The notes below the pieces were generated by a model. That model saw only the letters and a list, made by a program, of their open reading frames with translations, was not told where the DNA came from and ran no database searches. From Octopus sinensis (lineage: Eukaryota), in the NCBI RefSeq assembly GCF_006345805.1, contig NC_043001.1, positions 112,902,001 to 112,966,000 of the forward strand: a DNA stretch of 64,000 nucleotides, given 5' to 3'. Of this stretch, positions 1 to 62,515 are shown one piece after another; positions within the stretch are counted from its first letter, which is position 1, and every line of letters begins with the position of its first letter. A program made the position numbers and the translations under genes.

Positions 1-524
1 ATATCTATATATATATATATGTAAATATGTATGTATGTATGTGTATATATATATATATATATAATATATATGTAAATATGTATGTATGTATGTGTATATA
101 TATATATGTAATATGTATGTATGTGTGTATATATATGTAAATATATATATATATATATTATATATATATATATATAATATATATATATATTATATATGTG
201 TGTGTGTGTATATATATATGGTGTTGAGAGCTTACAGTATAGTTCGTCTGCTGCCCTGTTGTGATTGCTATTAGCCATATGGGTCATCTCTGACCAGTTG
301 AACTAGGTATGCCCAGGTAATGAACAAGATTACAGTTTTATTGTAGTATTTTTAAGAGAAATAATTTTCTCTCGGATTTTACTAATGATATTTTCCAAAA
401 ATATATAAAACATTTGTAACTGAAAATATTTTCACGGCACATTGTGTATCAAAAAGAATAATAATGTATAAAATGTCTCATTTAAAAGAACTACTGAATT
501 TTGTCTCTCTCTCTTACATTCTTT

Positions 525-2998: not shown

Positions 2999-3225
2999 AT
3001 GACAAGCTGGCAGAATTGTTAGCACACTGGGCAAAATGCTCAGCATCATTTCGTCTGTCCTTCATGTTCTGAGTTCAAATGCCACCAAGGTTGACTTTGC
3101 CTTTCATCTGTTCAGGGTTGATAAAATAAGTACCAGTTGAATGCTGAATGCTGGGGAGGTCAATCTATCCCCTTATCCTCTCCCCCAGAATTGCTGACCT
3201 TGTGCCAAAAATTGAAATCACTATA
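2999..3225 (+). mobile_element. SINE-B, diverged copy
   Basis: AGCTGGCAGAATTGTTAGCAC head, GAGTTCAAAT B-box and GACTTTGCCTTTCATC...GATAAAATAAGTACCAG central domain, shared with 13536-13737. Confidence 0.8.
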
Positions 3226-3480: not shown

Positions 3481-3629
3481 GAGGGATCTTGTACAGTCCA
3501 CAAAATTACATACTACCAAATAGCAGCTAAATCTCCTTCGAACCCTACCCACTACAATCTTAAAATACAATAACACATTGGACAACATACTCTGGGCTAC
3601 ATAAAAGTTATTTCAATTTGATCAGGTTT

Positions 3630-4001
3630 GGAAGCACTCCGTCGGTTACGACGATGAGGGTTCCAGTTGATCCGAATCAACGGAACAGCCTGCTCGTGAA
3701 ATTAACGTGTAAGTGGCTGAGCACTCCACAGACACATGCACCCTTAACGCAGTTCTTGGGGATATTCAGCGTGACACAGAGAGTGACAAGGCCGGCCCTT
3801 TGAAATACAGGTACAACAGAAACAGGAAGTAAGAGTGAGAGAAAGTTGTGGTGAAAGAGTACAGCAGGGATCACCACCATCCCCTGCCGGAGCCTTGTGG
3901 AGCTTTTTAGGTGTTTTCGCTCAATAAACACTCACAATGCCCAGTCTGGGAATCGAAACCGCGATCCTATGACCGCGAGTCCGCTGCCCTAACCACTGGG
4001 G
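3630..4001 (-). mobile_element. SINE-D, slightly 5'-truncated, with 10-bp TSD
   Basis: tRNA-like head on the minus strand (CCCAGTGGTTAGGGCAGCGG...GGTTTCGATTCCC). GATCAGGTTT at 3620-3629 and 4002-4011. Confidence 0.9.
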
Positions 4002-4777: not shown

Positions 4778-6526
4778 ATACTTCGTTTCAGTTTTCAGTT
4801 AAACCACAAATTTTAGCCCTTCTTTTACATTTCTTCTCTTTTTTTTCTTCAGTTCTTTCCATTTTCTTTCCCTTTCCCTTCAATTCCCAATTCTTGCAGT
4901 TATCCACCTCAGTATTATGTATCTCTTTCTCTCCTTTCTCTCACTCCCTCTCCTTCCCTCTTTTATTTTTTTCTTCTTCATTGCATGCATATGTCTATGT
5001 CTGTGTATGATGTGTCTGTGAGAGAGAGAGATCTATGATTCAGGCATGGCCTATAATTATTATTAATATTTGTAATAATCATGATTGTAACAATAATAAT
5101 TATTATTATTTTAACTATTATATACTTAGAAGAATGAAATGGGGGGGGGGGTAGAGAGAGACATGTTTGGAAATGTAGCCAGTTAAGTGTCGGGGTGGGG
5201 GGGGAAAGAAAAGGAGGAGGAGCTGGAAAACAAAGAAAAGAAGAGAAAGCATTTTAAAAGAGAAAAATAAAAATATAAAGTGAAATAAAAACAGGCTCCA
5301 AAAAATAGTAAATGTTACACACACACACACACACACAGACATACACACACACACACACACACACATACTGTGGCTGTTGCTGCCGCTGTGGTTTGTGTTG
5401 GTGATGGTGTGTCAGTTTTGGATTGGCAGTGGTGTGAGATATGGGCGAGATATGAGAAAGAAAAGGGGTCCAAAGATCAAGAAAATTTCCTTTGCAATGA
5501 ATCATTCATGTCATATTTCCCTGACAGTATTGGAAAAGGGGCTCCGCTCCCCGCCCCCACTCTCTCTCTCTCTCTTTTCCCTCCTTCTGTCTGTCTGTCT
5601 GTATCTCTTGCTTACTCTCCCCCCCTTGCATATCACCTCCACTCCACCCCACCCCTCGGGTTGCCTTGCTTTTGCCCTAACCCATCCTCCCTCCTTCCAT
5701 ACGTTGCATATTCACATTTGGAGAGGTTCCCAGACAAATATTATTATTAACATGACCAAGATTAATAATGCTTTGTGGGATTTTGTTTGGGAGTGATGCT
5801 ATGATTGTGGTTGAGGTGTGTGTGTGTGGAGGGGTAAATGGCGGGAGTGGTGGTGGTGGTGGAGGTGGTGGTGGTGGTGGTGGTGGTGGTTAGTGTGTGC
5901 AGGCATGTTAGAAGTAGCCTTGGTAATAATGGTGGCAGCGATGGCGATGATGATGGCAATGATGATGATGATGATGTGGATGAGGAGGGGTTAGTGTATG
6001 TTCATAATATTTTGGAGAAATTTTTTTTTGCGGAATCCCCTCCCCCCCCCACCACCATCACCACCACTCTTGTATCATTTTGTTTAATTTAAAAAGAAAA
6101 AAAAAATTTTTTTCTTCTTGTTATTATTTTTGTGTTCATGTTTTGATAATTGCTGCTTCTGACTTGCGGTCTGAAATTGATGTGTTTGTTTATTAATTTA
6201 TTGTGTGTAACTTCTTGTGTTTGTTGTATATGCATGTCTGAGACTGTATGTGGCAGTACTTGTGTACGTGTGTGTGTGTTTGTGTGCAAGGAGAGAGAGA
6301 GACAGAGAGAGACAGAGATAATGCATTTGTTGTTTTTATTGCTAAGTGAGACCATATCAAAAATCATATTTTTTAGTGTCTTCATATGCAAACATGCAAC
6401 TTGTATATTATGTGTTATAATTGTTCTATTACTTGCGTGCGTGTATGCTATGGTTGATGGCTCATACATGCATCCTTTTGAGTGTTATTATATCTATATA
6501 TATATATATCTATTATATATATTATA

Positions 6527-6574
<48 letters not shown>

Positions 6575-6575
6575 G

Positions 6576-6607
<32 letters not shown>

Positions 6608-6659
6608 ATATATATACCCTCTCTCTCTTTGGGAGAGGCACAAGCAACCTACACGCCAC

Positions 6660-6822
6660 ATATGCACACACGGCAGTAACTTCCACCTACCGAATTCAAT
6701 CACAAAGCTTCGGTTGACTCGGGGCTATAGTGGAGACACCTACCCAAAGTGCCACCAGTGGGACTGAACCAAAACCATGTAGCTAGGAGGCAAGCTCCCT
6801 AACCACACAGCCATGCCCGCCT
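6660..6822 (-). mobile_element. SINE-A 5' half, diverged
   Basis: Similar to the head and central region of 20966-21373 (GGGACTGAACC, AACCACACAGCCA). Confidence 0.7.
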
Positions 6823-6908
6823 ATTATATATATAATATGTATATATATATATATGTGTATATATATATATATATGTATATATATTATGTATATATTATAG
6901 ATGTATAT

Positions 6909-6963
<55 letters not shown>

Positions 6964-7027
6964 TATATATATATATATATATACTATATTATATATAGAT
7001 ATATATATATATATATTATATATATAT

Positions 7028-7086
<59 letters not shown>

Positions 7087-7134
7087 TATATATATATATA
7101 TTTATATATATATATATATATATATATCTATATT

Positions 7135-7315
7135 ATAATGGAAGGTTTACAAAAAAAAACGAAAGACGAGGCAGTGGAGTACAAACAAACAAATGTATTA
7201 GTATGGCGCTCAGGAATGAAATAGAACAAGTCTTTTACGTTTCGAGCCCGCTCTTCCACAGAAAGATACACAGAAAAAAAAAGGAGAGAAAAAAATGTGT
7301 GTAGGAGCTAATGAT
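7135..7315 (-). mobile_element. (TA)n-embedded module with a hammerhead-like motif (putative Penelope-like terminus)
   Basis: Minus strand of 7231-7266 reads TCTTT-CTGTGGA-A-GAGC-GG-GCTC-GAAACGT-A-AAAGA: stem I, variant core, stem II and a GUA site. (TA)n on both sides. Confidence 0.55.
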
Positions 7316-8689: not shown

Positions 8690-8731
8690 GTTTATATATG
8701 TATATACATGTTCATATATGTATTTTATCTA

Positions 8732-8795
<64 letters not shown>

Positions 8796-9090
8796 ATATA
8801 TATTATATATATGTGTGTATATATATATATGTGTGTATATATATATGTGTGTATATATATATATGTGTATATATATATATGTGTATATATATATATGTGT
8901 GTGTGTATATATATATATATAATTATATATATATATATACATGCACATAATTATACATGTACACATGTGTACGTATATGTATACACATACATGTGTAAGC
9001 ATTATGATTATATAAACACTTGTGTCTACAAACATCTGCATGCACATACATTTATATATGTATATATATATATATATACACATACACATA
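8690..9090. repeat. Compound (TA)n/(TG)n microsatellite
   Basis: Directly visible. Similar tracts at 1-220, 6490-6615, 6825-7135, 16320-16580, 47920-48190, 50670-51105, 57330-57480 and 61960-62650. Confidence 0.95.
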
Positions 9091-10087
9091 TAGATATATC
9101 TTCTCATACATGTATGTTTACCTGTGTATGATCTGTGTTTGTGTATGTTATGTTTTCAGTTTTTTTTTATATCCTTTTCTCCTTATCTTATTTCTATTTT
9201 GGATTTTATTATTATTCATTCATTCTGTACCATTTGAAAACAACAGAAAATGAAAAACATCCTAAAATTCTTCATGAAAAGAACATTCCCTTAATGAGCG
9301 ATGTTTCTTATACTATGGACCACTTTCTATTTCCCCTATTAGCTATCACTGATCCTATTTATGCCTTCTGAGAATGAATTCTTTTAATTAGTTGTGACTA
9401 ACCAAACTGTTTTTTTCCCCTCCTAATTGGTGCTATATTGATGTTACTTTGTTAATGTTTTCTGTCATTAGCTGTTGTTGATGTTACTCCTGAATGAGTA
9501 TTATTTCTTATAATGAGTTAGAACTGATTCATCTCTTTAAATGTGTAATTGGACAAGTCATTTATAAGTTATACTTTCTACTTTGTGGTTATCATTAACG
9601 TTATGTAATGCGTATCGTATCTTTGATTTCTTAAGGAATATCATCTCTCATTCTCGTTCATACTCAGGTGTATGTTGCTTTAATTTAGAGCTGCTTCTGT
9701 CCTAATTAGTAATAGGCTAAAAGTGGTACTCTTCTTACAGGTATAAGCAGGATAAATGTTGCTCACAAGTAAGTTCACACACACATGCATACACAAACAC
9801 ATATACTCGCATAAACGCACATGCATACACACCTAAATCAGCTTTCCATGTTCATGTGGGTTAAATGGATTGCCACTAACTGTCTGACTCAGTTCTTATT
9901 CAGAGTTCCTGCTCTTTTAGATGAGTTAGTGGCCTGTGTCTCACTGTTTCATTCCATTTTAGCATGGCTTCTATAGCTGGATACTCTTCCTAATAATGCC
10001 ATTCACTTCATAGAGGCAACTAAATGTAATTTATCATAGCACCAGCATTAGAGAGCTTACCTTGTCCCCTGCAAGACTAGAAAGTTT

Positions 10088-13535: not shown

Positions 13536-13737
13536 TATTTCTTTACTGCCCACAAGGGGCTAAACGGATTAGGTTGATTACATCGACCCCAGTGCGAAAC
13601 TGGTACTTTATTTATCGACCCCGAAAGGATGAAAGGCAAAGTCGACCTCGGCGGAATTTGAACTCAGAACGTAACGGCAGACGAAATACGGCTATGCATT
13701 TCACCCGGCGTGCTAACGTTTCTGCCAGCTCGCCGCC
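13536..13737 (-). mobile_element. SINE-B, full length, young
   Basis: Minus strand: GGCGGCGAGCTGGCAGAAACGTTAGC (A-box), GAGTTCAAATTCC (B-box), central GTCGACTTTGCCTTTCATCCTTTCGGGGTCGATAAA, 3' GTAAAGAAATA. Confidence 0.9.
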
Positions 13738-14577
13738 TTTAATGCACATATATAAACACATATATAGACACACACATATATAAACACACACATATATGTA
13801 TGAATGTGACCATACATTTACATGTCTATCTCATTTTCTCCCTCTCTCCTCTCCATTTCTCCCCTCCCTCTCTCCTCTCTTTCTTCCTCCTCTTCTTCTC
13901 TCCCCCAGATCTATCATCACTATGTATAAATGTGTATATGAACAAGCGTGTGCATGCTTGTATTGTGTTGTGTGTGTGTGTGTGTGTGTGTGTGTGAGAG
14001 TGTGTATATACATATTTGTAATCATATTTGTAAGTACTGATTTTTCTTCTCGGTACACATTTATGTGTTTATGATGATGATGATGATGATGATGATTGTA
14101 TCTGTATGTATGTATGTATGTACGTATTTGTAAAAGTATTTATATTTTATAATTGAAAAGCCATCAATATTTTGTCAGATTTTCCTGAATCATTGGTGGA
14201 AAAAAAAAAAAAAAAAAGGCTAAAAGAATTTACTCATAAATGAAATTTATTTATTCTTTTGCTTTCTTTCCTTTTCTTCCCATGTTTCCTGTATTTATAT
14301 ATTTTAAGAAATAAGTTATCAGTCATCTTAAACTCTGAATGTCTGTCAATTTAGCACCTCATCTTCTTTCATTGGCCAAACTTCCACAACTTCTCCAAAT
14401 ATTGACATATTCAACCTTTGCCCCAACCCAAACCTAATTTAATTTCAGTGCTATTTGCCACTTGAATTGACTCAAGAAAGAGAAATATTTAAGTTAATTT
14501 TTGTTTTCATATTTTCGGGTATTTTATAAATTAATAATGAACCAATACACACACACACACACACACACACACATTTT

Positions 14578-16566: not shown

Positions 16567-17321
16567 ATATATTTTATATACGTAAATTTTTTGACAGATA
16601 TCTTGTTTTAGGCATAAAATTGTCTTTATTCTTTTTAACCATTCTTTGCAACTCAAAACTTACCAAACAATTTTGATTTAAATTTCGTAACAGTTAAAAT
16701 TAGAAAAGGAAGAACGATGAAATTAGTTCTTAAATGGAAGTTGACGTCAGTGATTCAGTGAGAGAAATAAGATAACTGTGTTTACGGATTTTAAATATTC
16801 CAGTTTTTAATGAGCTCTTTGAATTTAGCTAAAGTATAGAATCTTTGCTAATTTCTAAATTATCTAAATTGTATTAATTCTTCTTTTGATATTGGTATCT
16901 TTGACCTATGCTTCAAGAATTTTCTTGTGTATATGTTTATGTGTGTTTGTGTATGTGTGTGTGTTAATGTCATGGTTCAAAGAACTGAGTAAACAAGGAG
17001 AAAATATGCTCAATACATATTGGTTTTATTACTATCAATGAAGGCACATGGCTCAGTGGTTAGAGTGTCAGGCACTGCAAGTAATATAGTATAATTAGTG
17101 TGACACAGCATTTACTAGCATAATCCACTTTTATTTATTTATTGCTTTATTCATTTAAGATACCATTTGGGGTTTGGATTGTACCTTGAATTTTAGCACC
17201 TCAAGAATAGTATGCATATAATAGTCAACCTTTGAAATTTAGCCTACATACCTTGTTCCTGGTCTAAAAAAAATCATATGTTAATCATCATTTAATGTTT
17301 GTCTTTGATACCTGTATAAAA

Positions 17322-17500
17322 TGCACTCTGTCCACTCTGCTGGGTGGTTGGTATTAGGAAGGGCATCCAGCTGTAGAAACTGCACCAAAACAGACACACA
17401 AGTCTGGTGCAGGCTCTTGCCTTGCCAGCTCCTGTCAAACTGTCCAACTCATGCCAGCATGGAGGGTGGATGTTGGACAGTGATGATGATGATGATTGGC
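17322..17500 (+). mobile_element. Family C (ATG)n-tailed retroposon, diverged 3' part
   Basis: GGAAGGGCATCCAGCTGTAGAAAC core, CATGCCAGCATGG, (GAT)n tail. Confidence 0.8.
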
Positions 17501-18712: not shown

Positions 18713-19270
18713 TATTTCTTTACTACCCACAAGGGGCTAAACACAGAGAGGACAAACAAACGGATTAAGTTGATTATATCGACCCCAGTGCATAACTGGT
18801 ACTTATTTAATCGACCCCGAAAGGATGAAAAGCAGAGTCGACCTTGGCGGAATTTGAACTTGGAAAGTAACGGCAGTCGAAATACCTATTTCTTTACTAC
18901 CCACAAGGGGCTAAACATAGAGAGGACAAACAAGGACAGACAAACGGATTAAGTTGATTATATTGACTCCAGTGCATAACTGGTACTTATTTAATTGACC
19001 CCGAAAGGATGAAAGGCAAAGTCGACCTCGGCGGAATTTGAACTCAGAGCGTACAGTATATTACTCCTTTCTACTATAAGCACAAGACCTGAAATTTATG
19101 GGAAGGCGCTAATCTGGGGTCGACTCCTCAGATCCCAGTGCTCAACTGGTACTTCTTTTATCGACCCCCAAAAAGATGAAAGGCAAAATTGACCGCGGTA
19201 GAATTTGAGCTCAGAATCTAAAAACAGATGAAATGCAGCTAAGCATTTTGTCCATCTTGCTTATGATTCT
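18713..19270 (-). mobile_element. Three SINE-B units in head-to-tail tandem
   Basis: TATTTCTTTACTACCCACAAGGGGCTAAAC starts at 18713 and 18887. A third, older unit spans about 19057-19270. Confidence 0.88.
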
Positions 19271-20965
19271 ACCTGCTCCACTACTTTCAAATACACCATA
19301 ATAAACAGATTTAGTCCCACCCAAAATTCTCTCCTTTTATTTCTCTTTCACTTAAGTGCAATAGAGGTATTTCAGGATTTCACATTAACACTGTTGGAGA
19401 GTAATTGTTTTATAGCTTGATATAAATTATTAGTTGATATTAAAGTTAACATCATCAATATCATTTTATATTCTGTTTTTTTTTTTCATGTCAGCATGGG
19501 TGAAGTAGATGTCACAGCATCTAGGCTAATGGTTATCAAATAGTGCACCATGTGAATCTAAAATAAATTTAAAGCCTTCTAAAAATCTATATTGATGCTT
19601 AAATAAAATTTAAGGCTTTCCTTTACATGTGAAATGCATCAGAAATTTTTAACTTGTCATGATAACAGTGCTAATAATTTTTACTTTGATCATCAATATT
19701 CCTTGAAGTAAACAAAAAGAAAAATTGGGAACCACTGCAATGTTTGAAGTTGCTTGTGTCATTTTTTTTTTTTTTTTTTGGTATTTTTATGGTTGGTTAC
19801 CCTTCCTGTGACCAGTCACTTGAAAGTATAGACCAGGTGCATTTTATCATGCTATTAACACTAGAGAGGTGGTCTTCAGTGGTTTTAAAATGTCCACTCT
19901 ACCCTGCATAGCTATTTTTATTCAGAGTTACTGTGCTTCTAGACAGACTGCATATGACAAGCTTTGCAAATCTTGCATCTTTTCTGTTTCTGCCATCTAG
20001 TTATATATAAACTAAATGTAATTTAGATCTCTAAACTAAATGTAATTATTCATGTTTTATATTCAAGTATTGTTATTATATTGAATATTTGTATTTTTGA
20101 AGTTGTTGAAATTGCATTAGAGTAATTCAACTAGAAAGTAGCAGGCTCTAAAAATATTAAATTGAGAGAAAAATATATCTGCTTTAGCTTTTGTACAAAT
20201 CTGTGAATTTGCTGATCCCACTAACATTTTTTTATGTGTATGGGGAAAAAATAAAGTTTTTTGTTGAGCCCCAAGCTAATTTTAATTGAGTAGATCCATG
20301 AAGGATTAGAGGATTTCCAGTTGTGACCATCCGATACTTTTGTAGGCGGTGTGTATCCAGAACTGCATTATCCAATATGTCCTTTGCTTTTTAAGACAGT
20401 ATGGTGTGATATGACGGAGATTTAGCTGCTATTTCTTACATATCAAGTGACTGTGTAAAGGCTTCCTTGTGTGCACATTTACCTATGCAAAGTTTTATAA
20501 TGTCTGAACCTGGACTGTCTTCACATTCTAGGCCCCTGGGCAAATCAGTGCACTTGGTTGTATAGTATTTAATGACAGCAAGCCTCAGCATATATTGGTC
20601 AGAATTGTGCCCCTAGACCTGAGAAGCCCCTGGGCAAATGTCCAGTGTGTCTGTGCCTTAAGATGGCTCTGATTTGGACCAATATACAGGGTGGTCAATT
20701 TGTCAATATGCAGTATATGTCAAGGATTTGGTAGTAGTCTCTGACACTGAATACCATGCTGTAGGTTTATTTACACCACCACATAGCACTTTTTTACACT
20801 GAAGAATGGTATCTCTCTGCTGGTACCAGTTTAGCATCTACATACACATTGCACAATTATTTTCATACTAATTAACACAACTCTCTGCACACATTTTCAT
20901 ACTCATGTATTTTCATGCAATCATTATTATGTCAAAGAATGCATTTGTTGTAAAACATTCACATA

Positions 20966-23700: not shown

Positions 23701-23930
23701 GTAAATGGACAAGATCTTTCACAATCGACTCATGAAGAAGCTGTCGAAGCTTTTCGAAGTGCAAAAGAACCCATTGTGGTAGAAGTACTGAGGAGAGCAA
23801 ACAAGGCTAAAATGAAAAGTCGGTCTCCAACGATGGTATCCGTTGGAACACAGACCGAGGAGGAGATTTTCTGCAGCAATGAGAGTCCTCCCACACCACC
23901 ACCTGGATTTTATGCTTTCAATGGCTCTGG
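23701..23930 (+). CDS. PDZRN3: Internal coding exon of a PDZRN3/PDZRN4 (LNX3/4, Slip1)-like PDZ-RING protein: C-terminal half of a PDZ domain plus linker
   Basis: Translates without stops as [77 protein letters not shown]. This matches my recollection of vertebrate PDZRN3 (VNGxDLSxATHxQAVEAFxTAKEPIVVQVLRR...GTQTD). Pyrimidine tract and TTCAG acceptor end at 23700, CTAAT branch-like motif at 23667-23671, GTAAGT donor at 23931. Phase 0 in, phase 2 out. PDZRN3 versus PDZRN4 cannot be resolved. Confidence 0.92.
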
Positions 23931-24696
23931 GTAAGTAATCACAAACATTTTATTTCATTTTTGTTTCTTTTCAGTTTTTTTATGAAATGACTTGGTTGTG
24001 TGCCTTTAAAGGGTGAGTCGGAGGCCTTTAAAATGGTCATGACCTTTGCTCTTCTTTCTCTGAGACAGATGGAAATGAAGAAAGGAGATATTGAATGGAC
24101 TGGATATCTGGTCTGAATACTTAAAATAGTGGACAATGTGAAAGATACACCAGAACAAGAATTGTTCCTTCTGACAAGTTTCCACACAGTTTCCGTCTAC
24201 TTTGTTTTACTCATAAAGATCTTTAGTTGACCTGAAGCTAGAAGACACTTGTTGAAAGTGCTGCATAGTAGAGGTGAAACAAAAATCATGTAGCTGTAGA
24301 GTGAACTTCCCAACCACATAATCATACCTGCGCATAAAGCTTTCTTTAAGCTACTAAAAGATATTTGAAAGCAATGAGAAACACATTTAATCATGATAGA
24401 TGAGCACCATTCTTCCTGTTTCTGTTTGTTATTGATAATCACTTCGAAGTTTAACTCTTTAGTATTTGAACCAGCCATATCTGGCCAAGATATTCTACCC
24501 ATTCAATGTTCAAATCAACCACATACGACTTCTCTCACCTATCCCACAATGTAATTCTAAAAATAAACAATCATGACATCAAAATCTTGAAGCTACAGTT
24601 TAATGCATGCTTAATTCAAAACAATGTAAATAAATGAGGATTACATTTGATGGAGCAATCTGAATGCTAAAGGGTTAAGGAGTAAGTTTCTAACAA

Positions 24697-28088: not shown

Positions 28089-29559
28089 TAGATAGATAGA
28101 TATATACACACTTTTCTCCCAAATTTACACTTATGCATATGCTAAAGCTTACTATTAGAAACATAGTTATCGAGTTTGTTTGATATCTTGCATTGCTTAT
28201 CTCAGTAATAATAATGGTAGACATTGTCATTATAACACTGACTACCCCACTGTTATCTTCATCACTATCATTGCCATCACCATCATTACTGCAATCATTA
28301 CTGACATTATTATCATGATCACCTGCACCATAATCACCATCATTACCACAACCACCATCATTACTACTTCCACATTAATGATCATCAACATCATTACTCC
28401 TACCTCATCATCATTGTATACTGTTGATATTGTACTGAATCAGAATATCTCCTATTGTTTCCATCGGAGTTACCACTACACCTTTCAAAGCTATTGTTAA
28501 TGGAAAGGCATTGTAATTATCATCGCATCTTCCTTGACATCATTTTCATATCTTTACTTCCATTCTGGGTTGGATGCGTCTGCACTGGTGCATAATTTCA
28601 TTATTTTTGATTCTGTGTTAACTCTGGTCTGTGAGGTCCAGATGCGCTTAAATCTTATCATGATTAAGACTCCATTGTCTCAATAACGAGATCTCGGAAT
28701 GATCTCAATTTGATACAACCTGAATATAAGGATTCTCAGTCAAAGATGGTAAGTTCAAGCTAAAAGAAGGATCAAGCACAAGACTGCTATTATTTCTATT
28801 GCAAGATTCATATCAGTGTAACCTCACACACATACATGCACACACACACACACCAACTAATTAATATATTGAACAATGTCTTTAAATAAGATTGTATACA
28901 GTTTTGCTAGTTAATAATCTTTTGTCGATTTGTGTGCCTGTATGTGTGTAGATATGTATTCTAATATTTCACTTAGACATTCACTCATAAAGTCTGTATG
29001 TTTTGAAAATTTAACATTCCCAAGTAAAGTGCACTTCATATTCAAGATGAAGCTAGAGGATGTTATCCTGGTACTCAACTAAGAGTCCACCACATCCTAT
29101 AACAGAAACAGCTGTAAGGTAATGAAGTTCAGTACATAACATTTGCTTTTTCTGGTGTCATCTCTTTCTTTCTACGTAGGTATATATATATATGTATGTG
29201 TGCAACAGCAAATGCCCACAATCGCATATGTGCATATTCATATAGAATTAATTCTTTGCATCCAAACTCTGTAAAAGACGTCGATTTTTACTGCAGGATC
29301 CTGAACAGTTAAAGTGTTCTTCAAAATCCATAGCAGTAAAATGATTGAACTATATTTATTCTCTATCAAAATATATGCTGGGGGTCTTAATCTTAAGCTT
29401 TAGATCTCTCAAAGAACATTTATTCGAGTTGGGGGTGAGGTAGTTCACAAATTGTGCCAGATGCAATTTGTGTGTATGGAGACATTTAGATGCATGTGCT
29501 TCCTACTCAAGTTTGCTACATAGAGATTCTGCCTTCCTAGATTTCTAGTGAATTGTTGT

Positions 29560-30090
29560 ACTCTTGAGAAGATGTGCCAAGCTAAGTAAAACATGACCAT
29601 CCATACACACAGGCATGTCCTTTGCTGGTGCTGGTGTCATGTAAAATGCAGGCCTGCGCCGGTCGCCCTGTGCTCCGCCGCGTCACCGTGCCCGATATCG
29701 AAAGAATGAGCCGAAGTTCGCTGTACCGCCCACGTACACACATGGACGTACCCGCGACCGATGCCGGAAGGCTGTCATGAGATACACGCGGTCGATACAG
29801 TGACGTGGTCCATTCCGTAAATTCCCGAAAGATGACAACTGCGGCTAGTATAGGTAGGGGCTGCCAGCGGCAGGCTTGCTTGGTGCTGTGTAAACATGAC
29901 TGCACCACTGGCATGTAAAAAGCACCCAGCACACTCTGTAAAGTGCTGGGCATTAGGAAGGGCATCCGGCTGTAGAAACCATACCAAATCAGACATTTGT
30001 AGTCTGGACAGCTCTCTGGCTGGCCAGTTCCTGTCAGACTGTCCAATCCATGCCAGTATGAAAAAATGGATGTTAAATAATGATGATGTT
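29560..30090 (+). mobile_element. Diverged family C element interrupted by a GC-rich foldback insert
   Basis: The left flank matches the extended 5' part seen at about 44390-44450. The right flank has GGAAGGGCATCCGGCTGTAGAAAC and an (ATG)n tail. Confidence 0.7.
29648..29879. other. CpG-rich imperfect rod-like inverted repeat of unknown origin
   Basis: About 60% GC and about 26 CpG by hand count. Multiple complementary blocks share one symmetry axis. Bounded by GCAGGCCTGC and GCAGGCTTGC. Confidence 0.75.
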
Positions 30091-30540
30091 GACTTGATCC
30101 AGCCTTTTACTTAGACTTTGGTCACTGCGAATGTTTTGATTTCACTATTCGTATTTCTGTTTCATGTAGTGACACATCTGGAAATCCAATCTGTGTAGTC
30201 AACCCAACAGAGCCCTTAACTTGTTATATTCACTTCATAGACAACACCATCACTTTGTGAAATAACAGTGCTAATTACATCACTGGTTCTCAGTAACATC
30301 TGTGATACTTGATTATTTTAATGTAGAATTAAGTTATTTTGAGACAAATGGCATACTATTTAGAGTAGGAATTCAAAAGCATTCATAATATCTGGGATAA
30401 ATTGCAAGTGCAGAAGAACCTGTCAGGGTGCGTCTGTACTGAAAATTCATAAGTAGGTTGTATTAAATAACTGTTTTGGCTTTAATATTTAAACAGATTT
30501 TATTTTCATATGGGTTCTCAACAGACACCTTTGGACTTGA

Positions 30541-30810
30541 ATCATCATCATCCTCATCCTTTAACGTCCGTTTTGCATGCTAGCATGGGTTGGACGGTTT
30601 TGACTGAGGGCTGGCAACCAGATGGATGCACCAGGCTCCAGTCTTGATCTGGCAGAGTTTCTACAGCTGGATGCCCTTCCTAACGCCAACCACCTCGAGA
30701 GTGTAGTGGGTGCTTTTTACGTGCCAGTCAGGTGGCACTGGCAATGACCTCGCTCGAATCTTTTTACATGTGCCCACCGTCACAGGTGCCAGTGAAGCGA
30801 CATTGGTGGG
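30541..30810 (-). mobile_element. Family C retroposon
   Basis: (CAT)n tail, CATGCTAGCATGG, CTGGATGCCCTTCCTAACGCCAACC, internal repeat units. Confidence 0.88.
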
Positions 30811-31044
30811 CAAAATGTCTTCCCATGTGGTTGCGGTTTCTCATCTGTACTTTAGACAGTTGGTTTCTTTTGACTTTGGACAAAATCTTATAGTTTCAAA
30901 GGAAAGGAATGATGTGCTGCCCTTTTTGTTTCCTTTTTGTGATTAGCAGCATAAATGGAGATACTTTGAATTATTGAAACCTGGTTGGGGAATGTCAACT
31001 AACTAAGAATTGAACCTTTTCGAAATATAATTGTTGCTACAAAG

Positions 31045-31500
31045 GTAGTGAACTGGCAGAATTGTTTGCATGCTGGGTAAAAATGCTTAGCAGCATTTTG
31101 CCTGTCTTACCTTCTGAGTTCAAATTCCACTGAAATCACTTTGTCTTTTATCCTTTCAGGGCTGAGAAATTAAGTATTAGTTGAGTATTGAAATCAATGT
31201 AATTGAGTTACTCTGCCCCCCCCCCAACCAAAAAAAATTACTGGCCTTGTACCAAAACTTGAAACCAATATTCATGACTTTAAGGCAGCAAACTGGCAGA
31301 ATTGTTTGCATGTTGGGCAAAATGTTTAGTGACATTTTGCCTGTCTTTATGTACTGAGTTCAAATTCGACCTAAGTCAGCTTAGCCTTTTATCCTTTTGG
31401 GGTCAGTAAAATAAGTACCATTTAAGTACTGGGGGTGATGTAATCGACTTACACTCTCCCCCAGAATTGCTGGCCTTGTGCCAAAATTTGACACCAGTGT
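31045..31500 (+). mobile_element. Two diverged SINE-B copies in tandem
   Basis: AACTGGCAGAATTGTTTGCATG occurs twice (about 31051 and 31290), each followed by GAGTTCAAATTC and the central domain. Confidence 0.8.
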
Positions 31501-31589: not shown

Positions 31590-31866
31590 TCGCCTTGACT
31601 GGCTTCCGTGCCGGCGGCACGTAAAAAGCACCAATCCGATCGTGGCCATTGCCAGCCTCGCCTGGCACCTGTGCCAGTGGCACGTAAAAAGCACCCACTA
31701 CATTCACGGAGTGGTTGGCGTTAGGAAGGGCATCCAGCTGTAGAAACACTGCCAGATCAGACTGGAGCCTGGTGCAGCCTTCTGGCTTCTCAGATCCCCG
31801 GTTGAACCGTCCAACCCATGCTAGCATGGAGAACGGACGTTAAACGATGATGATGATGATGATGAT
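31590..31866 (+). mobile_element. Family C retroposon with about 2 internal repeat units
   Basis: Core and (GAT)n tail as in the other copies. Confidence 0.9.
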
Positions 31867-32377: not shown

Positions 32378-32740
32378 GCACCATCCATTCGTGGCTGTTG
32401 CCAGCCTCGCCTGGCCCCCCGTGCCGGTGGCACGTAAAAGCACCATCCGTTCGTGGCCGTTTGCCAGCTCCGTCTGGCACCTGTGCAGGTGGCACGTAAA
32501 AAGCACCATCTGATCGTGGCCGTTGCCAGCCTCGCCTGGCACCTGTGCGGGTGGCACGTAAAAAGCACCCACTACACTCACAGAGTGGTTGGCGTTAGGA
32601 AGGGCATCCAGCCGTAGGAACACTGCCAGATCAGACTGGACCTGATGCAGCCTTCTGGCTTCACAAACCCCAGTTGAACCGTCCAACCCATGCTAGCATG
32701 GAAAGCGGACGCTAAATGATGATGATGATGACGATGATAT
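32378..32740 (+). mobile_element. Family C retroposon with a ~62-bp tandem array
   Basis: GCCAGC unit starts at 32400, 32463 and 32525, followed by core and tail. Confidence 0.9.
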
Positions 32741-37198: not shown

Positions 37199-37564
37199 TC
37201 TTTATATATAAAAGTAAGGTTGTGTGCTGTCTGTCTTCTACGATTTAGATCCCTAACTACTCCCACATTTTGCGGTGCAGTTTAACCAAAACCGGGTATC
37301 TTATCGTCGTGATTCATATCGAGCCCTTCTGGGTATTAGCGCGCGTCTACGATGAGTCTACGATTTAATGCATTTTTTTCGCTATTATATACGGGAAGTA
37401 ACTCTCTAAAAATGTCTACGATGAGTCAACGATTTAAAAAAATTTACCATCACTTTTTTCCATTTTTAATGCAATTTTTTGCTATTTTTTGGCTATAACT
37501 CTCTAAAAATGCTTATATAGTTATTTCCCTTACAAACCCGAGCAACGCCGGGCGATACTGCTAG
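37199..37564 (+). mobile_element. Non-autonomous Helitron 2
   Basis: 5' TCTTTATATATAAAA, 3' CCCGAGCAACGCCGGG hairpin, CTAG end, A|T insertion site. Confidence 0.88.
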
Positions 37565-37689: not shown

Positions 37690-37810
37690 TATTCTTTTCT
37701 ACTCTAGGCACAAGGCCTGGAATTTTTGGGGTACTTAATTTATCGATCCTGAAAGGATGAAAGGCAAAGTCAACCTCAGCAGAATTTGAACTCATAATTT
37801 AAAGACAGAC
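37690..37810 (-). mobile_element. SINE-B fragment
   Basis: GAAAGGATGAAAGGCAAAGTCAACCTCAGCAGAATTTGAACTC. Confidence 0.75.
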
Positions 37811-37827: not shown

Positions 37828-38204
37828 GTTTATCCGAATCGTGGCCGATGCCAGCACCGCCTCGACTGGCTTCCGTGTCGGCGGCACATAAAAAGCACCA
37901 TCCGAATCGTGGCTGAAGCCAGTGCCGCCTCGACTAGCTTCCGTGCAGGTGGCACATAAAATGCACCAATCCGACCATGGCCGATGCCAGCCTCGCCTGG
38001 CACCAGTGCAGGTGGCACGTAAAAAGCACCCACTACACTCATGGAGTGGTTGGCATTAGGAAGGGCATCCAGCTGTAGAAACATTGCCAGATAAGACCAG
38101 AGCCTGGTGCAGCCTTCTGGCTTCCCAGATCCCCGGTCGAACCGTCCAACCCATGGAGAACAGACGTTAAACAATGATGATGATGATGATGATGATGATG
38201 ATGC
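37828..38204 (+). mobile_element. Family C retroposon with 3-4 repeat units
   Basis: Repeated GGCACATAAAA..CACC..TCCGA units, core, (GAT)n tail. Confidence 0.9.
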
Positions 38205-39234: not shown

Positions 39235-39624
39235 GGATGGAAGCACTCCGTCAGTTACGACGATGAGGGTTCCGGTTGATCCGAATCAACGGAACAGTCT
39301 GCTCGTGAAATTAATGTGTAAGTGGCTGAGCACTCCACAGACACGTGCACCCTTTAACGTAGTTTTCGGGGATATTCAGCGTGACACAGAGAGTGACAAG
39401 GCCGGCCCCTTGAAATACAGGTACAACAGAAACAGGAAGTAAGAGTGAGAGAAAGTTGTGGTGAATGAGTACAGCAGGGATCACCACCATCCCCTGCCGG
39501 AGCCTCGTGGAGCTTTTTAGGTGTTTTCGCTCAATAAACACTCACAACGCCCGGTCTGGGAATGAAACCGCGATCCTATGACCGCGAGTCCGCTGCCCTA
39601 ACCACTGGGCCATTGCGCCTCCAC
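39235..39624 (-). mobile_element. SINE-D, full length, with 10-bp TSD
   Basis: TTTGGAGAAT at 39225-39234 and 39625-39634. Head GTGGAGGCGCAATGGCCCAGTGG on the minus strand. Confidence 0.93.
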
Positions 39625-44258: not shown

Positions 44259-44640
44259 ATGCTGGTGTCATCTAAAGATCACCTTTCGAGCATGTTGGGT
44301 CTCACAGAGGCAAAGTGGCTGAGTTCCTTTCAAGTGTTGGGCCTCATGGAAGCAGTGACTGAGACCTTTGGCATTATGTTGTGCTTGAGAAAAAGACCCA
44401 TCAAGCTGAGCAAAACCACAGTCATGGCAGATGCTGGTGTCACACAAATGGCACCTGTGCCAGCGGCATATAAAAGCACCCACTACACTCTCAGAGTGGT
44501 TAGCTTTAGCTAGAGCATCCAGCCATAGAAAAGCATGCCTGATCAGACTGGAGTCTGGTGCAGCCTTCCAGCTTACCTGCCCTGATCAAACTGTCCAACC
44601 CATGCCAGCATGGACAATGGACATTAAATGATGATGATAA
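44259..44640 (+). mobile_element. Older family C copy with extended 5' region
   Basis: Core and tail diverged. The upstream GACCTTTGGC...GCTTGAGAA segment is also seen inverted at about 16100-16165. Confidence 0.75.
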
Positions 44641-48721: not shown

Positions 48722-48935
48722 TTATTATTATTATTATTATTATTATTTATTATTTTTTATTTTTTATTTTTTTTTATTATTATTATTATCTATTTATTAT
48801 TATATTATTTTATTATTATTTTTATTATTATTATTATTGTTATTATATTTTATTATTATTATTTATTATTATTATTATTACTATTTTTTATTATTATTAT
48901 TATTATTATATTATTATATTATAATTATTATTATT
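48670..48935. repeat. (TAT)n microsatellite
   Basis: Directly visible. Confidence 0.95.
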
Positions 48936-49607
48936 GGTGTTAGTATTTTTATTTATATTTATCAGAGCATGTTTCCAGATTTCTATATGAGTGATGTGTG
49001 CAATTCTTTTCTCTAACCTCCCTCTCTTTCTCTCTGTCTGTCTGTCTGTCTCTCTGTCTCTCTCCGTTATATTTTATTTTTTTTTTTAGTATACTTTGAA
49101 AAAATATCTTTATTGTGGCAAATGTTGCTATGAAAGGCTTTGTTATTTTTAATTTTCTTCATTTGAGGAAGTTTAGTAGCCAGTAAGGATGAATGGTGGG
49201 GTAAAAACAGAATGCTAGGAAAATAAATAAACTGGTCTTTTAAATTTTTCTATAAATTATTTTTGTGCATGATTTATATAGGTATATATATTCAATGAAC
49301 CCTCATTAAACTGTACTAATGGGGAGTCAAAGTTGCCCATTTTAGCTGATTGTCTGAATTACCTCATAGTAAATTTTAATATGGTGTAAACGTATGATGT
49401 TGGAAATACATGCTGAATATGATAAGCCATAAGAAAATTGCACCATTAAAAACATGTCATCACTCGTGAGGGATAATAACTAGGTAGAATGTACCCTGCT
49501 TTTGCTAATTGTTTTAGGTGTATGTGTAGCTGTGAGCAGACATAGATACCATCTTAGGTTTCCTGTTCTTTAACCCAGCTGGTCATCGATGTAATAACTT
49601 CTTCAGA

Positions 49608-49932
49608 GACGGCCGTTTGCCAGCCTCATCTGGCACCTGTGTCGGTGGCACATAAAAACACCATCCGAGCGTGGCCGTCTGCCAGCCTCGTCTGGCACCT
49701 GTGTCGGTGGCACATAAAAAACACCATCCGAGCGTGGCCGTTCGCCAGCCTCGTCTGGCACCTGTGTCGGTGGCACATAAAATCACCCACTACACTCTCG
49801 GAGTGGTTGGCGTTAGGAAGGGCATCCAGCTGTAGAAACACTGCCAGATCTGACTGGCCTGGTGCAGCCTTCGGGCTCCCCAGACCCCAGTTGAACCGTC
49901 CAACCCATGCTAGCATGGAAAGCGGACGTTAA

Positions 49933-49965
<33 letters not shown>
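49608..49965 (+). mobile_element. Family C retroposon with a 62-63-bp array
   Basis: GCCAGCC at 49619, 49681 and 49744, then core and (GAT)n tail. Confidence 0.92.
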
Positions 49966-49967: not shown

Positions 49968-51039
49968 GACAAGGTCTCTTCAAGAATTCTGTCTTTTGCA
50001 ACTCTTACATGCTTCCTTGTACCAATGGATAATAAATAATTCAAAATTTGCATCTGTTATTTTTTCAAAGAAAATTAAGTGAATTTGTCCTTACTTTTAT
50101 GTATATCTTAAACAGTTTGCTTTTTAACACCATAATCTTCATAAAACCTCACCGCTAAAGCAGCAGTCTCTAACTTCCTTATAAGTTCCAGTTTCTAGTT
50201 CGCAGACAGAATCACATACTACCTTTTTACAGTATATTAATTAGTTCACCTTGAAGACATAATGTAGAATGCAAGGCTGACAGATGCATAAGAACAAACC
50301 AAAAAAAAAAAAAAAAGAGAGACAGAGAGAGAGAGCAATACAACTTGTATTGTGAATGATAGTTATTATCATAGTGCAACCATGCTGAACCTACCAGTCA
50401 GCAATTTCATGTAGATGGAATGAATGCCTTAGTACACTATAGTATAGTGATGGTTTATCTGTACTCTAGAGTAATGTTGGTGGTGTATACATACTTTATA
50501 TCAGTATTTGATGGTATCAGCTGTATAAACTGTAGTGTCTTCAAAACCAACTGCTGAAAGCAAAAGATTTCAGTAATTTCAGATCTCAGCAGTGAAGCAT
50601 GTGCACCTCAGTTGGTTTGACTTAGCAGTGATCAGTGTCTGTCTGTAGATAGATGGATGGATAGATAGATATTGTATATATATATATATATAATATATAT
50701 ATATATATAGGGGGAGAGAGAGAGAGAGTGACAGCCTGCTGGATACCCCGAAGGTGTTTTTCTTCATTATTAGCATCACTATTTTCTCTCTTTCTCTGTG
50801 TGTGTGTGTATATATATATATATAATATATATATATAATATATATATATATAAAAACATATATATATATATATATATAACCATATATATATATATATAAA
50901 AACATATATATACATATATATATATAACCATATATATATATATATATATACATAATATATATATAAACATATATATATACACATAATATATATATAAACA
51001 TATATATATATACATACATACATACATACATACATATAA

Positions 51040-54754: not shown

Positions 54755-54955
54755 CATCATCATCATTGTTCGACCGTGGTCGAGACAATGGAATTTACCA
54801 TGCTACGCCAGACTTCACGGTCCATCATGGCATTACGGAGGTCCTGTTGCTGGATGCCTGTATCACTGGAGATTACATCAGGGTAGGAGAGTGTGCGCCC
54901 TCTGGTATTGCGAGCAGATGGCTTCCAGAGGAGTAAGAGTAGAAATTACTTCTTT
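54755..54955 (-). mobile_element. 5'-truncated RTE LINE, same family as 59974-60409, with 10-bp TSD
   Basis: Nearly identical to 60208-60409 in reverse. TTCCCACAAT at 54745-54754 and 54956-54965. Confidence 0.92.
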
Positions 54956-55879
54956 TTCCCACAATGCCTAGGCATATGTTTGAGTATCTGTGCCTTGCAG
55001 CACAGATACTCAAACATGACTGGTGCCAAACTGTGAGTGCATCTGCATATTATTCCACTGCTTAGTCACTCTATTACTTGAAGAGTTGCATACACTTTGA
55101 GAAATAATTCTATACTCCTCATGATTCGTTAAAAGTCAGTTCCTATGTGTGCTGAGCATTTGCTGTGTTCTAATCACAAAGATGGGTCCAATCTCTGCCA
55201 GCATAGAGAATGGACATTAAAGGATGCTGATGATGATCCCAAGATGTCATTATGGTAGACCGTTATAAATTCCACAACTATACTGAGGTATGTGTCAATT
55301 TTCCTAACCACTGCTTTACCTCCATGGTGAATTTGTTATTCACTTCAATGATTCTTTGTAGCTTTATACTTAAATACATACATGAACATATGTGATACAG
55401 CCGTATATAAATGTAACACATTTCCATCTACATTGATTAACATAATTTTGGACAGATTGTATAGGGAAATGTTTTCTATAAATATGGAAATCTGTGTGTT
55501 TGTGACCAGGTCTTTGTTTAGTTATATGGGTGCGCTTTAAGTTATGCATACGGTTGAATAAATGTATGAATGACTTGACTTTTGCCATAACCTTTAGAGG
55601 TGATTAAGTGTAGTTCTCTTTGAAGTTCTATCTATTACTGGTACAAATGAGCTGAACTCATTTTACCACTTCACTGCCAGGTCAGATGATCATAGCACCT
55701 GGCTAGTACTTAGACAGTTAATCCTCACAGTACCTAACCAACCTCAACATTGCTTTACTCTGTTAAACTCATAGGAGTGTTTCATGATGGTCCATTGACT
55801 ATAATCAGCAGTCTTTGAATAAATTTCATTATGAAGACAGTTGATATTGCCAACAACAACATCAGCAATCGCAATAATT

Positions 55880-61845: not shown

Positions 61846-62057
61846 CTGTGTAGATGCATGTAGATGTACACACAGGTTTGCATGCACATTACATTAACAT
61901 GTTCTTAAAAGTGTACAAATACGTTTACACTCACAATACACTAAAAGGCATGTATCTTATATATGTATGTGTGTGGTGTATAATATATATACATATGATG
62001 TAGTGTGTGTGTGTGTGTGTGTGTGTGTATTATATAGTGTGTATGTATATGTATGTG

Positions 62058-62089
<32 letters not shown>

Positions 62090-62090
62090 G

Positions 62091-62143
<53 letters not shown>

Positions 62144-62342: not shown

Positions 62343-62400
<58 letters not shown>

Positions 62401-62475
62401 GTATATATATATATATATATATAATATATAATATATATATATATATATACATATATTATATATATATGTATATAT

Positions 62476-62515
<40 letters not shown>

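What the first reader, a model, noticed from the sequence alone, without database searches (positions are those of the whole stretch)
29648..29879. Foreign-looking CpG-rich rod-shaped foldback (~222-nt unit between palindromic 10-bp direct repeats)
Seen: about 60% GC and about 26 CpG in an AT-rich, CpG-poor intron, single copy in the window, inside an old family C retroposon. Complementary blocks share one axis (position sums 59518-59527): GCCTGC 29652/29870, GCCC 29665/29858, GCCGC 29677/29841, GTCA 29682/29833, GAATG 29704/29811, an 18-bp block 29718-29735/29786-29803 (14 WC + 1 GU), and CATG 29741/29776. This gives a closing stem, a weakly paired central bubble (about 29686-29703/29816-29832), an inner stem and an apical loop. 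The boundaries are GCAGGCCTGC and GCAGGCTTGC, 222 nt apart. I found no convincing ORF and no hammerhead or HDV core. Inference: it may be an endogenised viroid-like or retrozyme-like circular RNA, a horizontally acquired structured RNA (the stem-bubble-stem plan recalls bacterial 6S RNA, and CCGATAT...AAGAATG and CTGCGGC loosely echo the E. coli sequence as I recall it), a young unknown MITE, or an assembly or synthetic insert.
Basis: partly seen in the sequence, partly recalled or inferred. Interest (0 to 1): 0.85.

Follow-up and report, generated by a model that had tools for sequence, protein, structure and literature searches.

The report
Young foldback insertion in an old SINE
A 212-bp, CpG-rich, non-coding stretch with two imperfectly mirrored halves was inserted fairly recently into a much older SINE in a probable intron, most likely as a small non-autonomous mobile element; no test run here supports a viroid-like or bacterial-RNA origin.

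Summary
At 29648-29879 there are 232 nt with 60.8% GC and 26 CpG (o/e 1.21; window 0.385).

All 26 CpG start at 29657-29868. That is exactly the 212 bp lying between GCAGGCCTGC (29648) and GCAGGCTTGC (29870), a 10-mer found nowhere else in the 64 kb.

The host SINE copy is old (72-76% identical to its relatives; 0-1 CpG). The 3' 10-mer can be read, marginally, as SINE sequence, so the 10-mers are probably a target-site duplication.

The two halves are inverted copies at about 70% identity (z 3.8-5.1; no shuffle reaches the score). However, folding energy is no better, or barely better, than shuffles. In addition, 16 of 29 arm mismatches are transversions, so nothing suggests a selected RNA structure.

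Searches found no source or relative:
- Rfam, tRNA scan and ribozyme motifs
- E. coli, plasmid and phage BLAST
- k-mer scans of three collections
- six-frame protein searches

Two unrelated repeats in the window are just as CpG-rich, so CpG richness here marks youth, not foreignness.

Best reading (about 0.42): a young MITE-like foldback element, with a 10-bp duplication as Mutator-like elements make. Copy number and empty sites could not be tested. Interest is low.

The parts
29648..29657 (.). 5' copy of the 10-bp direct repeat, GCAGGCCTGC (a perfect palindrome). Probably the duplicated copy of the target site.
   Evidence: The pattern is found only here and at 29870 in 64 kb (0.04 expected). 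Near matches with up to 2 mismatches occur at chance level and not in other SINE copies.
29658..29869 (.). The inserted element proper: 212 bp and non-coding. All 26 CpG start at 29657-29868. The two arms (about 29658-29763 and 29764-29869) are inverted copies at about 70% identity.
   Evidence: composition and CpG positions. (arms: 67 matches, 29 mismatches, 20 gap columns; z 3.8). (on-axis pairs). (no RNA family, tRNA, protein or SINE similarity).
29718..29803 (.). Inner part of the rod. The 18-bp block 29718-29735 pairs with 29786-29803 (14 Watson-Crick pairs plus 1 G:U), and the apical region lies between them.
29698..29829 (.). CGAAAG at 29698-29703 and again at 29824-29829. The two sit opposite each other on the rod axis (position sum 59527), giving a symmetric GAAA/GAAA internal loop in the + strand fold. 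This could be chance (roughly 0.1 by my own rough estimate, not computed).
   Evidence: Read directly from the sequence. GAAA positions.
29870..29879 (.). 3' copy of the direct repeat, GCAGGCTTGC. It can be read as host SINE sequence.
   Evidence: From 29871, CAGGCTTGCTTGGTGC aligns with CAGCCTCGCCTGGCAC of three other SINE copies (for example 31653-31668). The alignment needs a 13-nt gap for a net gain of only about 1.5 score units, so this evidence is marginal.
29585..29647 (+). Left piece of the old host SINE copy. SINE homology runs on to GTAAAATGCA, ending at 29650.
   Evidence: No CpG in 29590-29647.
29880..30095 (+). Right piece of the old host SINE copy, ending in its ATG-rich tail.
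   Evidence: 72-76% identity to 10 other copies. One CpG, o/e 0.09.
23701..23931 (+). Context: a coding exon (C-terminal part of a PDZ domain plus linker) 5.7 kb upstream. The insert is therefore probably intronic, and the + strand is the one transcribed with the gene.

Best explanation
This is a young insertion of a short, non-coding, non-autonomous foldback (MITE-like, terminal-inverted-repeat) DNA element of 212 bp (29658-29869). It sits in an old, CpG-depleted SINE copy inside a probable intron of a PDZ-domain gene.

Inferred mechanism:
- A transposase encoded elsewhere recognised the two inverted arms.
- It integrated the element at the near-palindromic target GCAGGCTTGC with a 10-bp staggered cut.
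- Repair of the stagger produced the flanking 10-bp duplication. One later substitution accounts for the 9/10 match.
- A 10-bp duplication lies within the 9-11 bp range reported for Mutator-like elements.

At this locus the element is probably passive. It is transcribed only as part of the intron, where its arms could form an imperfect hairpin of about 75-80 base pairs.

Shown: the boundaries, the direct repeat, the inverted symmetry, the lack of coding or known RNA content, and that the insert is younger than its host SINE.

Inferred: that the repeat is a target-site duplication, that the element is a DNA transposon, and the superfamily.
For: 1. The compositional boundary and the direct repeat coincide to the base. 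All 26 CpG start at 29657-29868, and the flanks have 0-1 CpG.
2. The 10-mer occurs only at the two boundaries in 64 kb, where 0.04 is expected. Looser matches are at chance level and absent from other SINE copies.
3. The 3' 10-mer aligns, marginally, with SINE sequence in three other copies. The left piece ends within the SINE unit. The insert itself has no similarity to the SINE.
4. The two halves are inverted copies: z 3.8-5.1, 0 of 1000 shuffles. Almost all predicted pairs fall on a single axis.
5. The host SINE has lost essentially all family CpG (o/e 0-0.09, against 0.56-0.75 in the other copies), while the insert has 1.21. The insert is therefore much younger than its host. Other young repeats in the window show the same CpG richness (13540-13740, o/e 1.34).
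6. There is no coding capacity, RNA family or tRNA.
7. There is no poly(A) or microsatellite tail on either strand, which argues against retroposition.
8. Literature: Mutator-like elements generally make 9-11 bp duplications (PMC4334395). In Octopus vulgaris, recently active insertions include 21 Mutator families, 49 unclassified TIR families and 65 single-insertion 'MITE' families of about 196 bp on average (PMC13282606).
Against: - No second copy could be found, so family membership, true termini and the duplication cannot be confirmed. No cephalopod genome or repeat library was searchable here.
- The arms are only about 70% identical, and the extreme termini match only 8/11. That is low for a recently mobile TIR element.
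- As RNA or as single-stranded DNA the element folds no better than shuffles.
- The alignment that makes the 3' 10-mer host-derived is marginal.
- An alternative reading derives both 10-mers from neighbouring, mutually similar parts of the SINE unit, with no duplication at all.
- No transposase gene or related terminus is present in the window.
Confidence: 0.42

Rival explanations
1. A young fragment of some other genomic sequence. Candidates are a 5'-truncated retroelement 3' end, a piece of an rDNA spacer, or a piece of a CpG island. It would have been inserted by target-primed reverse transcription or captured during repair of a staggered double-strand break. It is not a transposon unit in its own right.
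For: It is single copy in the window. The arms are only 70% identical and the termini are poor. Retroelement insertions make duplications of variable length, so 10 bp is compatible. LINEs and SINEs dominate recent insertions in Octopus vulgaris (PMC13282606). No family could be assigned.
Against: Inverted symmetry over the whole length is not expected of a random fragment or a LINE 3' end. There is no tail on either strand. There is no similarity to any LINE or SINE remnant in the window. No frame has a reverse-transcriptase or other protein match.
Confidence: 0.25
2. An assembly or contamination artefact: 212 bp of unrelated DNA spliced into the SINE by a chimeric read or a polishing error.
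For: There is a sharp compositional break. It is single copy, and no relatives were found anywhere.
Against: A 9/10 direct repeat made at least partly of host sequence flanks the insert exactly. Real integration produces this; chimeric joins do not. There is no match to plasmids/vectors, phages (a collection that should include the usual phage sequencing controls), E. coli, bacterial genomes or metagenomes. No adapter sequence that I know of is recognisable.
Confidence: 0.08
3. An older insertion whose CpG survive because the stretch is kept unmethylated in the germ line. It would be a small CpG-island-like regulatory element, such as an intronic promoter or enhancer derived from a mobile element, rather than a young one.
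For: CpG o/e of 1.21 is above neutral expectation. The direct repeat already carries one substitution in 10. The arms are strongly diverged.
Against: The surrounding intron and the host SINE are strongly CpG-depleted right up to the boundary. Other clearly young repeat copies in the window show the same CpG richness. Nothing here indicates transcription initiation.
Confidence: 0.08
4. A DNA copy of a rod-shaped structured RNA, either an endogenised viroid-like or retrozyme-like circular RNA or an unknown small RNA, inserted by a reverse transcriptase.
For: The - strand folds into an unbranched rod of 82 pairs (z -2.63, 1/200 shuffles). A symmetric CGAAAG/CGAAAG internal loop lies on the axis. 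A variable-length duplication is compatible with retroposition.
Against: - No ribozyme or any other Rfam family at E<=10, and no CUGANGA motif.
- It is a single unit, not tandem, and has no LTRs.
- Without the 10-mers, which are probably host sequence, the energy z is +0.29 (+) and -1.44 (-).
- 16 of 29 arm mismatches are transversions. Wobble-compatible transitions show no significant strand bias (4 against 9).
- No match in viral contigs.
Confidence: 0.05
5. A horizontally acquired bacterial structured RNA such as 6S RNA.
For: Only the stem-bubble-stem outline and the GC content.
Against: - No 6S or other bacterial family in Rfam at E<=10.
- No blastn match in 5,426 E. coli genomes, plasmids or phages.
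- The one 20-mer hit among 185,579 species' genomes does not extend beyond the 20 bases.
- Several arm differences sit at CpG/TpG or CpG/CpA sites, as expected of a sequence long resident in a methylated animal genome.
Confidence: 0.01

Closest known systems
MITEs / non-autonomous TIR DNA transposons, especially those derived from Mutator-like elements
   Same: Short (212 bp) and non-coding. The inverted arms make up the whole element. It is flanked by a direct repeat of 10 bp, within the 9-11 bp range given for Mutator-like elements (PMC4334395). The target is near-palindromic. It is nested in another repeat in an intron. Its size is like the roughly 196-bp 'MITE' insertions reported as recently active in Octopus vulgaris (PMC13282606).
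   Different: Only one copy is known. The arms are about 70% identical and the termini are poor. No autonomous partner or shared terminus was found. The GC and CpG content is unusually high for the host genome.
Foldback (FB-type) elements of insects
   Same: The element consists essentially of two long inverted arms. By my own recollection, not checked here, FB elements make a duplication of about 9 bp.
   Different: FB arms are long and built of tandem sub-repeats. No sub-repeats were found here, and the element is far shorter.
Retrozymes and viroid-like circular RNAs
   Same: The size class (about 200-400 nt), the rod-like predicted fold and the high GC content.
   Different: There is no hammerhead or other self-cleaving ribozyme. 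There are no LTRs or tandem units. The folding energy is not exceptional. The arm differences do not preserve pairing.
Bacterial 6S RNA
   Same: Only the outline: closing stem, looser middle, inner stem.
   Different: There is no sequence or covariance-model similarity. It sits in an animal intron and is flanked by a duplication of host repeat sequence.

Membership tests
MITE / non-autonomous TIR element | Terminal inverted repeats | tested here: met
   The arms are inverted copies over their whole length (z 3.8-5.1). They are imperfect, though: 70% overall and 8/11 at the extreme ends.
MITE / non-autonomous TIR element | Target-site duplication flanking the element | tested here: inconclusive
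   A 9/10 direct repeat of 10 bp lies exactly at the compositional boundaries and is unique in the window. That the 3' copy is host sequence rests on a marginal alignment. No empty site was available.
MITE / non-autonomous TIR element | Short and without coding capacity | tested here: met
   212 bp. There are no protein relatives in any frame.
MITE / non-autonomous TIR element | Multiple dispersed copies with the same ends | not testable with these tools
   One copy in the window. No cephalopod genome or repeat library could be searched. Protein-level searches that include some eukaryotic contigs found nothing.
Mutator-like superfamily | 9-11 bp target-site duplication | tested here: met
   10 bp, if the repeat is a duplication (PMC4334395). 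Chapaev elements make 3-4 bp with CAC...GTG ends (PMC4079192). That does not fit.
Mutator-like superfamily | Termini shared with an autonomous element that encodes a Mutator-type transposase | not testable with these tools
   Neither terminus (16- and 17-nt patterns, up to 3 mismatches) recurs in the window. I saw no transposase-like ORF among the window's long ORFs (read by eye, not searched).
Viroid-like RNA / retrozyme | Self-cleaving ribozyme (hammerhead, hairpin, twister, HDV-like and others) | tested here: not met
   cmscan against Rfam 15 at E<=10 finds nothing in the insert. No CUGANGA on either strand.
Viroid-like RNA / retrozyme | Tandem units, or LTRs carrying the ribozyme | tested here: not met
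   A single unit. The only direct repeat is the 10-mer.
Viroid-like RNA / retrozyme | Rod fold that is more stable than shuffled sequence and maintained by compensatory change | tested here: inconclusive
   Energy z ranges from +0.29 to -2.63 depending on strand and bounds. 16 of 29 arm mismatches are transversions. Covariation cannot be tested with one sequence.
Bacterial 6S RNA | Match to the 6S covariance models, or sequence similarity to bacterial 6S genes | tested here: not met
   No Rfam match. No blastn match to E. coli genomes.
SINE | Head derived from tRNA, 5S or 7SL with an internal pol III promoter, and a 3' tail | tested here: not met
   No tRNA. No 5S, 7SL or tRNA family. No A-rich or microsatellite tail on either strand.

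The most novel reading that the evidence does not exclude
The 212-bp unit is a genomic copy of a so far undescribed rod-shaped RNA replicon or small structured RNA of cephalopods that carries no known ribozyme. Its better-folding - strand would be the functional RNA. The insertion would record a recent reverse-transcription and integration event.
Probability: 0.04. Interest if true: 0.75.

Novelty: new member of a known kind. Interest (0 to 1): 0.2.

Why it matters
If the main reading holds, this is one more young non-autonomous element in a repeat-rich cephalopod-type genome. It is useful mainly in two ways:
- As a marker of recent DNA-transposon activity, possibly Mutator-like.
- As a clean example of how CpG content dates nested insertions in a methylated gene body.

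The imperfect hairpin it adds to an intron of a PDZ-domain gene could be a substrate for RNA editing enzymes, but nothing here shows that.

It would matter more only if the sequence turned out to have no relatives in its own genome, which would suggest horizontal arrival, or to give a discrete or circular RNA.

Tried and rejected
- **Rfam.** cmscan at E<=10 on 29400-30150 gave three weak snoRNA-like chance hits, all in the SINE flank and none in the insert. At gathering thresholds the whole window has no match.
- **tRNA scan.** ARAGORN found none.
- **BLAST collections.** blastn in 'distant' mode against plasmids, phages and E. coli genomes gave one chance hit at E 0.8 and otherwise nothing.
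- **Exact k-mer scans.** Five 18-mers in viral contigs found nothing. Two 20-mers in metagenome contigs found nothing. Two 20-mers in bacterial and archaeal genomes gave one hit. It does not extend beyond the 20 bases, and about one hit is my estimate of what chance alone would give in a collection of that size.
- **Six-frame protein search.** A six-frame translation of the insert, with X at stops, against 5.8 billion protein clusters found nothing at E<=0.01.
- **phmmer search.** The open - strand frame against 1.84 billion representatives gave six hits, with E-values down to 2e-14. All are 14-25-residue matches multiplied by 5-10 tandem repeats in the target. I rejected them as artefacts.
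- **Orthologous or allelic locus, by the neighbouring exon.** The PDZ exon finds only ORFs at 44-84% identity on other molluscan or invertebrate contigs. In the two contigs fetched, nothing but the exon aligns.
- **Orthologous or allelic locus, by flanking ORFs.** A composite of ORFs flanking the insert found nothing. The empty-site test was therefore impossible.
- **Chimeric retro-copy made together with the SINE.** Rejected, because the insert keeps its CpG while the SINE has lost its own.
- **Variant domain of the SINE.** Rejected. Smith-Waterman scores against five SINE copies equal those of shuffles.
- **hAT, Tc1/mariner, piggyBac, PIF and CACTA-type boundaries.** No matching duplication or terminal motif at any nearby boundary (read).
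- **Chapaev.** My recollection of a 10-bp duplication was wrong. The literature gives 3-4 bp (PMC4079192).
- **Full-text search of papers** for five 15-17-mers of the insert found nothing.

Full report
**1. The observation**

The stretch 29648-29879 (232 nt) is 60.8% GC and holds 26 CpG (o/e 1.21). The window as a whole is 35.6% GC with CpG o/e 0.385. This is the most CpG-dense 200 bp of the 64 kb.

blastn with 7-base words finds no second copy in the window. Only the flanks, which belong to a SINE, match elsewhere.

Position sums are 59518-59527, and the 18-bp block has 14 Watson-Crick pairs and 1 G:U.

The 10-mers GCAGGCCTGC (29648) and GCAGGCTTGC (29870) are 222 nt apart. The pattern GCAGGCYTGC occurs nowhere else in the window, where 0.04 occurrences are expected.

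**2. What is and is not beyond chance**

The inverted symmetry is real.
- The left half aligned to the reverse complement of the right half scores 14 for the 232 bp, against -10.7 +/- 4.8 for 1000 dinucleotide shuffles (z 5.1).
- For the inner 212 bp the score is 6 against -12.0 +/- 4.7 (z 3.8). No shuffle reaches either score.
- In the minimum-energy folds, 55 (+) and 73 (-) pairs lie on one axis. Shuffles give 8-9 +/- 11, reaching the observed value 1/500 and 0/500 times.
- The - strand folds as one unbranched rod of 82 pairs.

The stability is not exceptional.
- For the 232 nt, z is -1.25 (+) and -2.63 (-).
- Without the two 10-mers, z is +0.29 (+) and -1.44 (-).
- As single-stranded DNA, z is +1.41.

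The arms have 67 matches, 29 mismatches and 20 gap columns, about 70% identity. Sixteen of the 29 mismatches are transversions, which break pairing on both strands. Wobble-compatible transitions number 4 for the + strand and 9 for the - strand, which is not a significant bias.

This is the picture of a degenerate inverted repeat, not of an RNA structure kept by selection.

**3. Boundaries and host**

All 26 CpG start between 29657 and 29868. In 29400-30150 the nearest CpG outside this run start at 29425 and 29967. The compositional unit is therefore the 212 bp between the 10-mers, to the base.

I compared the two flanks separately with four other copies of the SINE.
- The left piece aligns up to GTAAAATGCA, ending at 29650.
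- The right piece aligns from 29871. Its CAGGCTTGCTTGGTGC matches CAGCCTCGCCTGGCAC in three copies, for example 31653-31668.
- That extension costs a 13-nt gap for a net gain of only about 1.5 score units, so it is marginal evidence.

The host copy is 72-76% identical to ten other copies in the window. It has 0 and 1 CpG in its two pieces (o/e 0 and 0.09). The other copies have o/e 0.56-0.75.

The insert has no similarity to the SINE. Smith-Waterman scores equal those of shuffles.

Near matches to the 10-mer (up to 2 mismatches) occur at chance frequency, 36 against 31 expected, and not in other SINE copies. The two 10-mers are thus unlikely to be merely two similar parts of the SINE.

I read the 10-mers as a target-site duplication of a near-palindromic target, with one later substitution. 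By my own estimate this is about 70% likely. The main alternative is that both are SINE-derived and similar by coincidence.

Boundaries proper to hAT, Tc1/mariner, piggyBac, PIF or CACTA elements give no matching duplication.

**4. Age**

The host SINE has lost essentially all CpG of its family, while the insert keeps 26. The insert therefore arrived long after the SINE, or it is shielded from methylation.

CpG richness is not a sign of foreign origin here.
- A copy of a second SINE-like family at 13540-13740 has 17 CpG (o/e 1.34).
- A single-copy stretch at 37240-37420 has o/e 1.82.

This also rules out a chimera formed together with the SINE.

**5. What it is not**

- Rfam 15 at E<=10 gives nothing inside the insert. 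At gathering thresholds the whole window gives nothing.
- There is no tRNA and no CUGANGA motif.
- blastn finds nothing in 5,426 E. coli genomes or in phages. In plasmids it finds only one chance hit (E 0.8).
- Seven different 18-20-mers have no match in viral, metagenome or prokaryotic genome collections. The one exception is a 20-mer hit that does not extend.
- A six-frame translation finds no protein among 5.8 billion clusters.
- One - strand frame is open across the insert. An exhaustive phmmer search with it returned six hits. All are short matches multiplied by tandem repeats in the target: 20 residues x10 in a satellite-like ORF, and 14-25 residues, repeated many times over, in bacterial repeat proteins. 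I reject them.
- Pfam finds nothing.
- There is no A-rich or microsatellite tail on either strand.

**6. Context**

An exon at 23701-23931 (+) has acceptor ttcag| and donor |gtaagt. It encodes the end of a PDZ domain. Its best database relatives are ORFs at 44-84% identity on other molluscan or invertebrate contigs.

The insert lies 5.7 kb downstream, so it is probably intronic, and the + strand is transcribed with the gene.

Neither this locus nor a close orthologue is in the searchable protein-derived collections. No empty-site comparison could be made.

**7. Most likely explanation**

The best reading is a young, non-coding, non-autonomous foldback (MITE-like) element of 212 bp. It would have been integrated by a transposase supplied in trans that makes a 10-bp staggered cut.

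Among cut-and-paste superfamilies as I recall their duplication lengths, that length fits Mutator-like elements, for which 9-11 bp is reported (PMC4334395). It does not fit Chapaev elements, which make 3-4 bp with CAC...GTG ends (PMC4079192).

A recent repeat annotation of Octopus vulgaris lists, among recently active insertions, 21 Mutator families, 49 unclassified TIR families and 65 single-insertion 'MITE' families averaging about 196 bp (PMC13282606). Such objects are therefore ordinary in this kind of genome.

Against this reading:
- Only one copy is known.
- The arms are 70% identical and the termini are poor.
- No partner element is present in the window.

My confidence is about 0.42.

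The rivals, in order:
- A young fragment of some longer unit, inserted or captured (0.25).
- An artefact (0.08).
- An older insert whose CpG are protected (0.08).
- A DNA copy of a rod-shaped RNA (0.05).
- Bacterial 6S RNA or horizontal transfer (0.01).

**8. Novelty and score**

The feature is real but most likely ordinary: a new member of a known kind, with its family unassigned. Interest is 0.2.

The most novel reading not excluded is a copy of an undescribed ribozyme-less rod RNA. I give it a probability of about 0.04.

Noticed in passing
window 23701-23931 (+): A coding exon with clean splice signals (ttcag|GT ... GG|gtaagt). It encodes the C-terminal part of a PDZ domain plus a Pro-rich linker. 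The best database relatives are ORFs at only 44-84% identity on ENA or Logan contigs, so the source species does not seem to be represented by this exon.
   Followed up: partly
window 30540-30800 (-), 31590-31860, 32380-32730, 37830-38190, 49500-49950, 63055-63235, 17317-17492, 44465-44638: Many copies of one SINE family with a variable number of internal units of about 60 bp (one to three or more), ending in (ATG)n-like tails. CpG o/e is 0.56-0.75 in the five copies measured (the first five coordinates listed), against 0-0.09 in the host copy of the finding.
   Followed up: partly
window 13540-13740; older copies at 18758-19278, 3005-3138, 31041-31451, 37730-37810: A second SINE-like family has one CpG-rich copy (17 CpG in 201 bp, o/e 1.34). 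Young repeat copies in this window are therefore as CpG-rich as the finding.
   Followed up: partly
window 37200-37560: An AT-rich but strikingly CpG-rich single-copy stretch (o/e 1.82 at 37240-37420). It has an internal 51-bp direct repeat (37364-37414 and 37465-37511, 80%) and repeated tctacgatgagtc-type motifs. Its nature is unknown. It may be another young insertion.
   Followed up: no
window 59512-59784, 3628-3900, 39238-39510; 60207-60398 and 54766-54958 (inverted): Near-identical repeat copies (96-98%) point to recently active elements. The second pair is a near-identical inverted duplicate of the end of a 148-codon open frame (59955-60398). By eye that frame resembles a retroelement ORF tail, but it has no Pfam match.
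   Followed up: no
window 1-300, 6500-7200, 8700-9100, 48750-49000, 50750-51000, 62000-62700: Long AT-rich microsatellite tracts (GC down to 6-16%) punctuate the window.
   Followed up: no
L001 4717-4736: A 20-mer of the insert matches an alphaproteobacterial MAG exactly, but nothing around it aligns. About one such hit is my estimate of what chance alone would give in a 596-Gb collection.
   Followed up: yes
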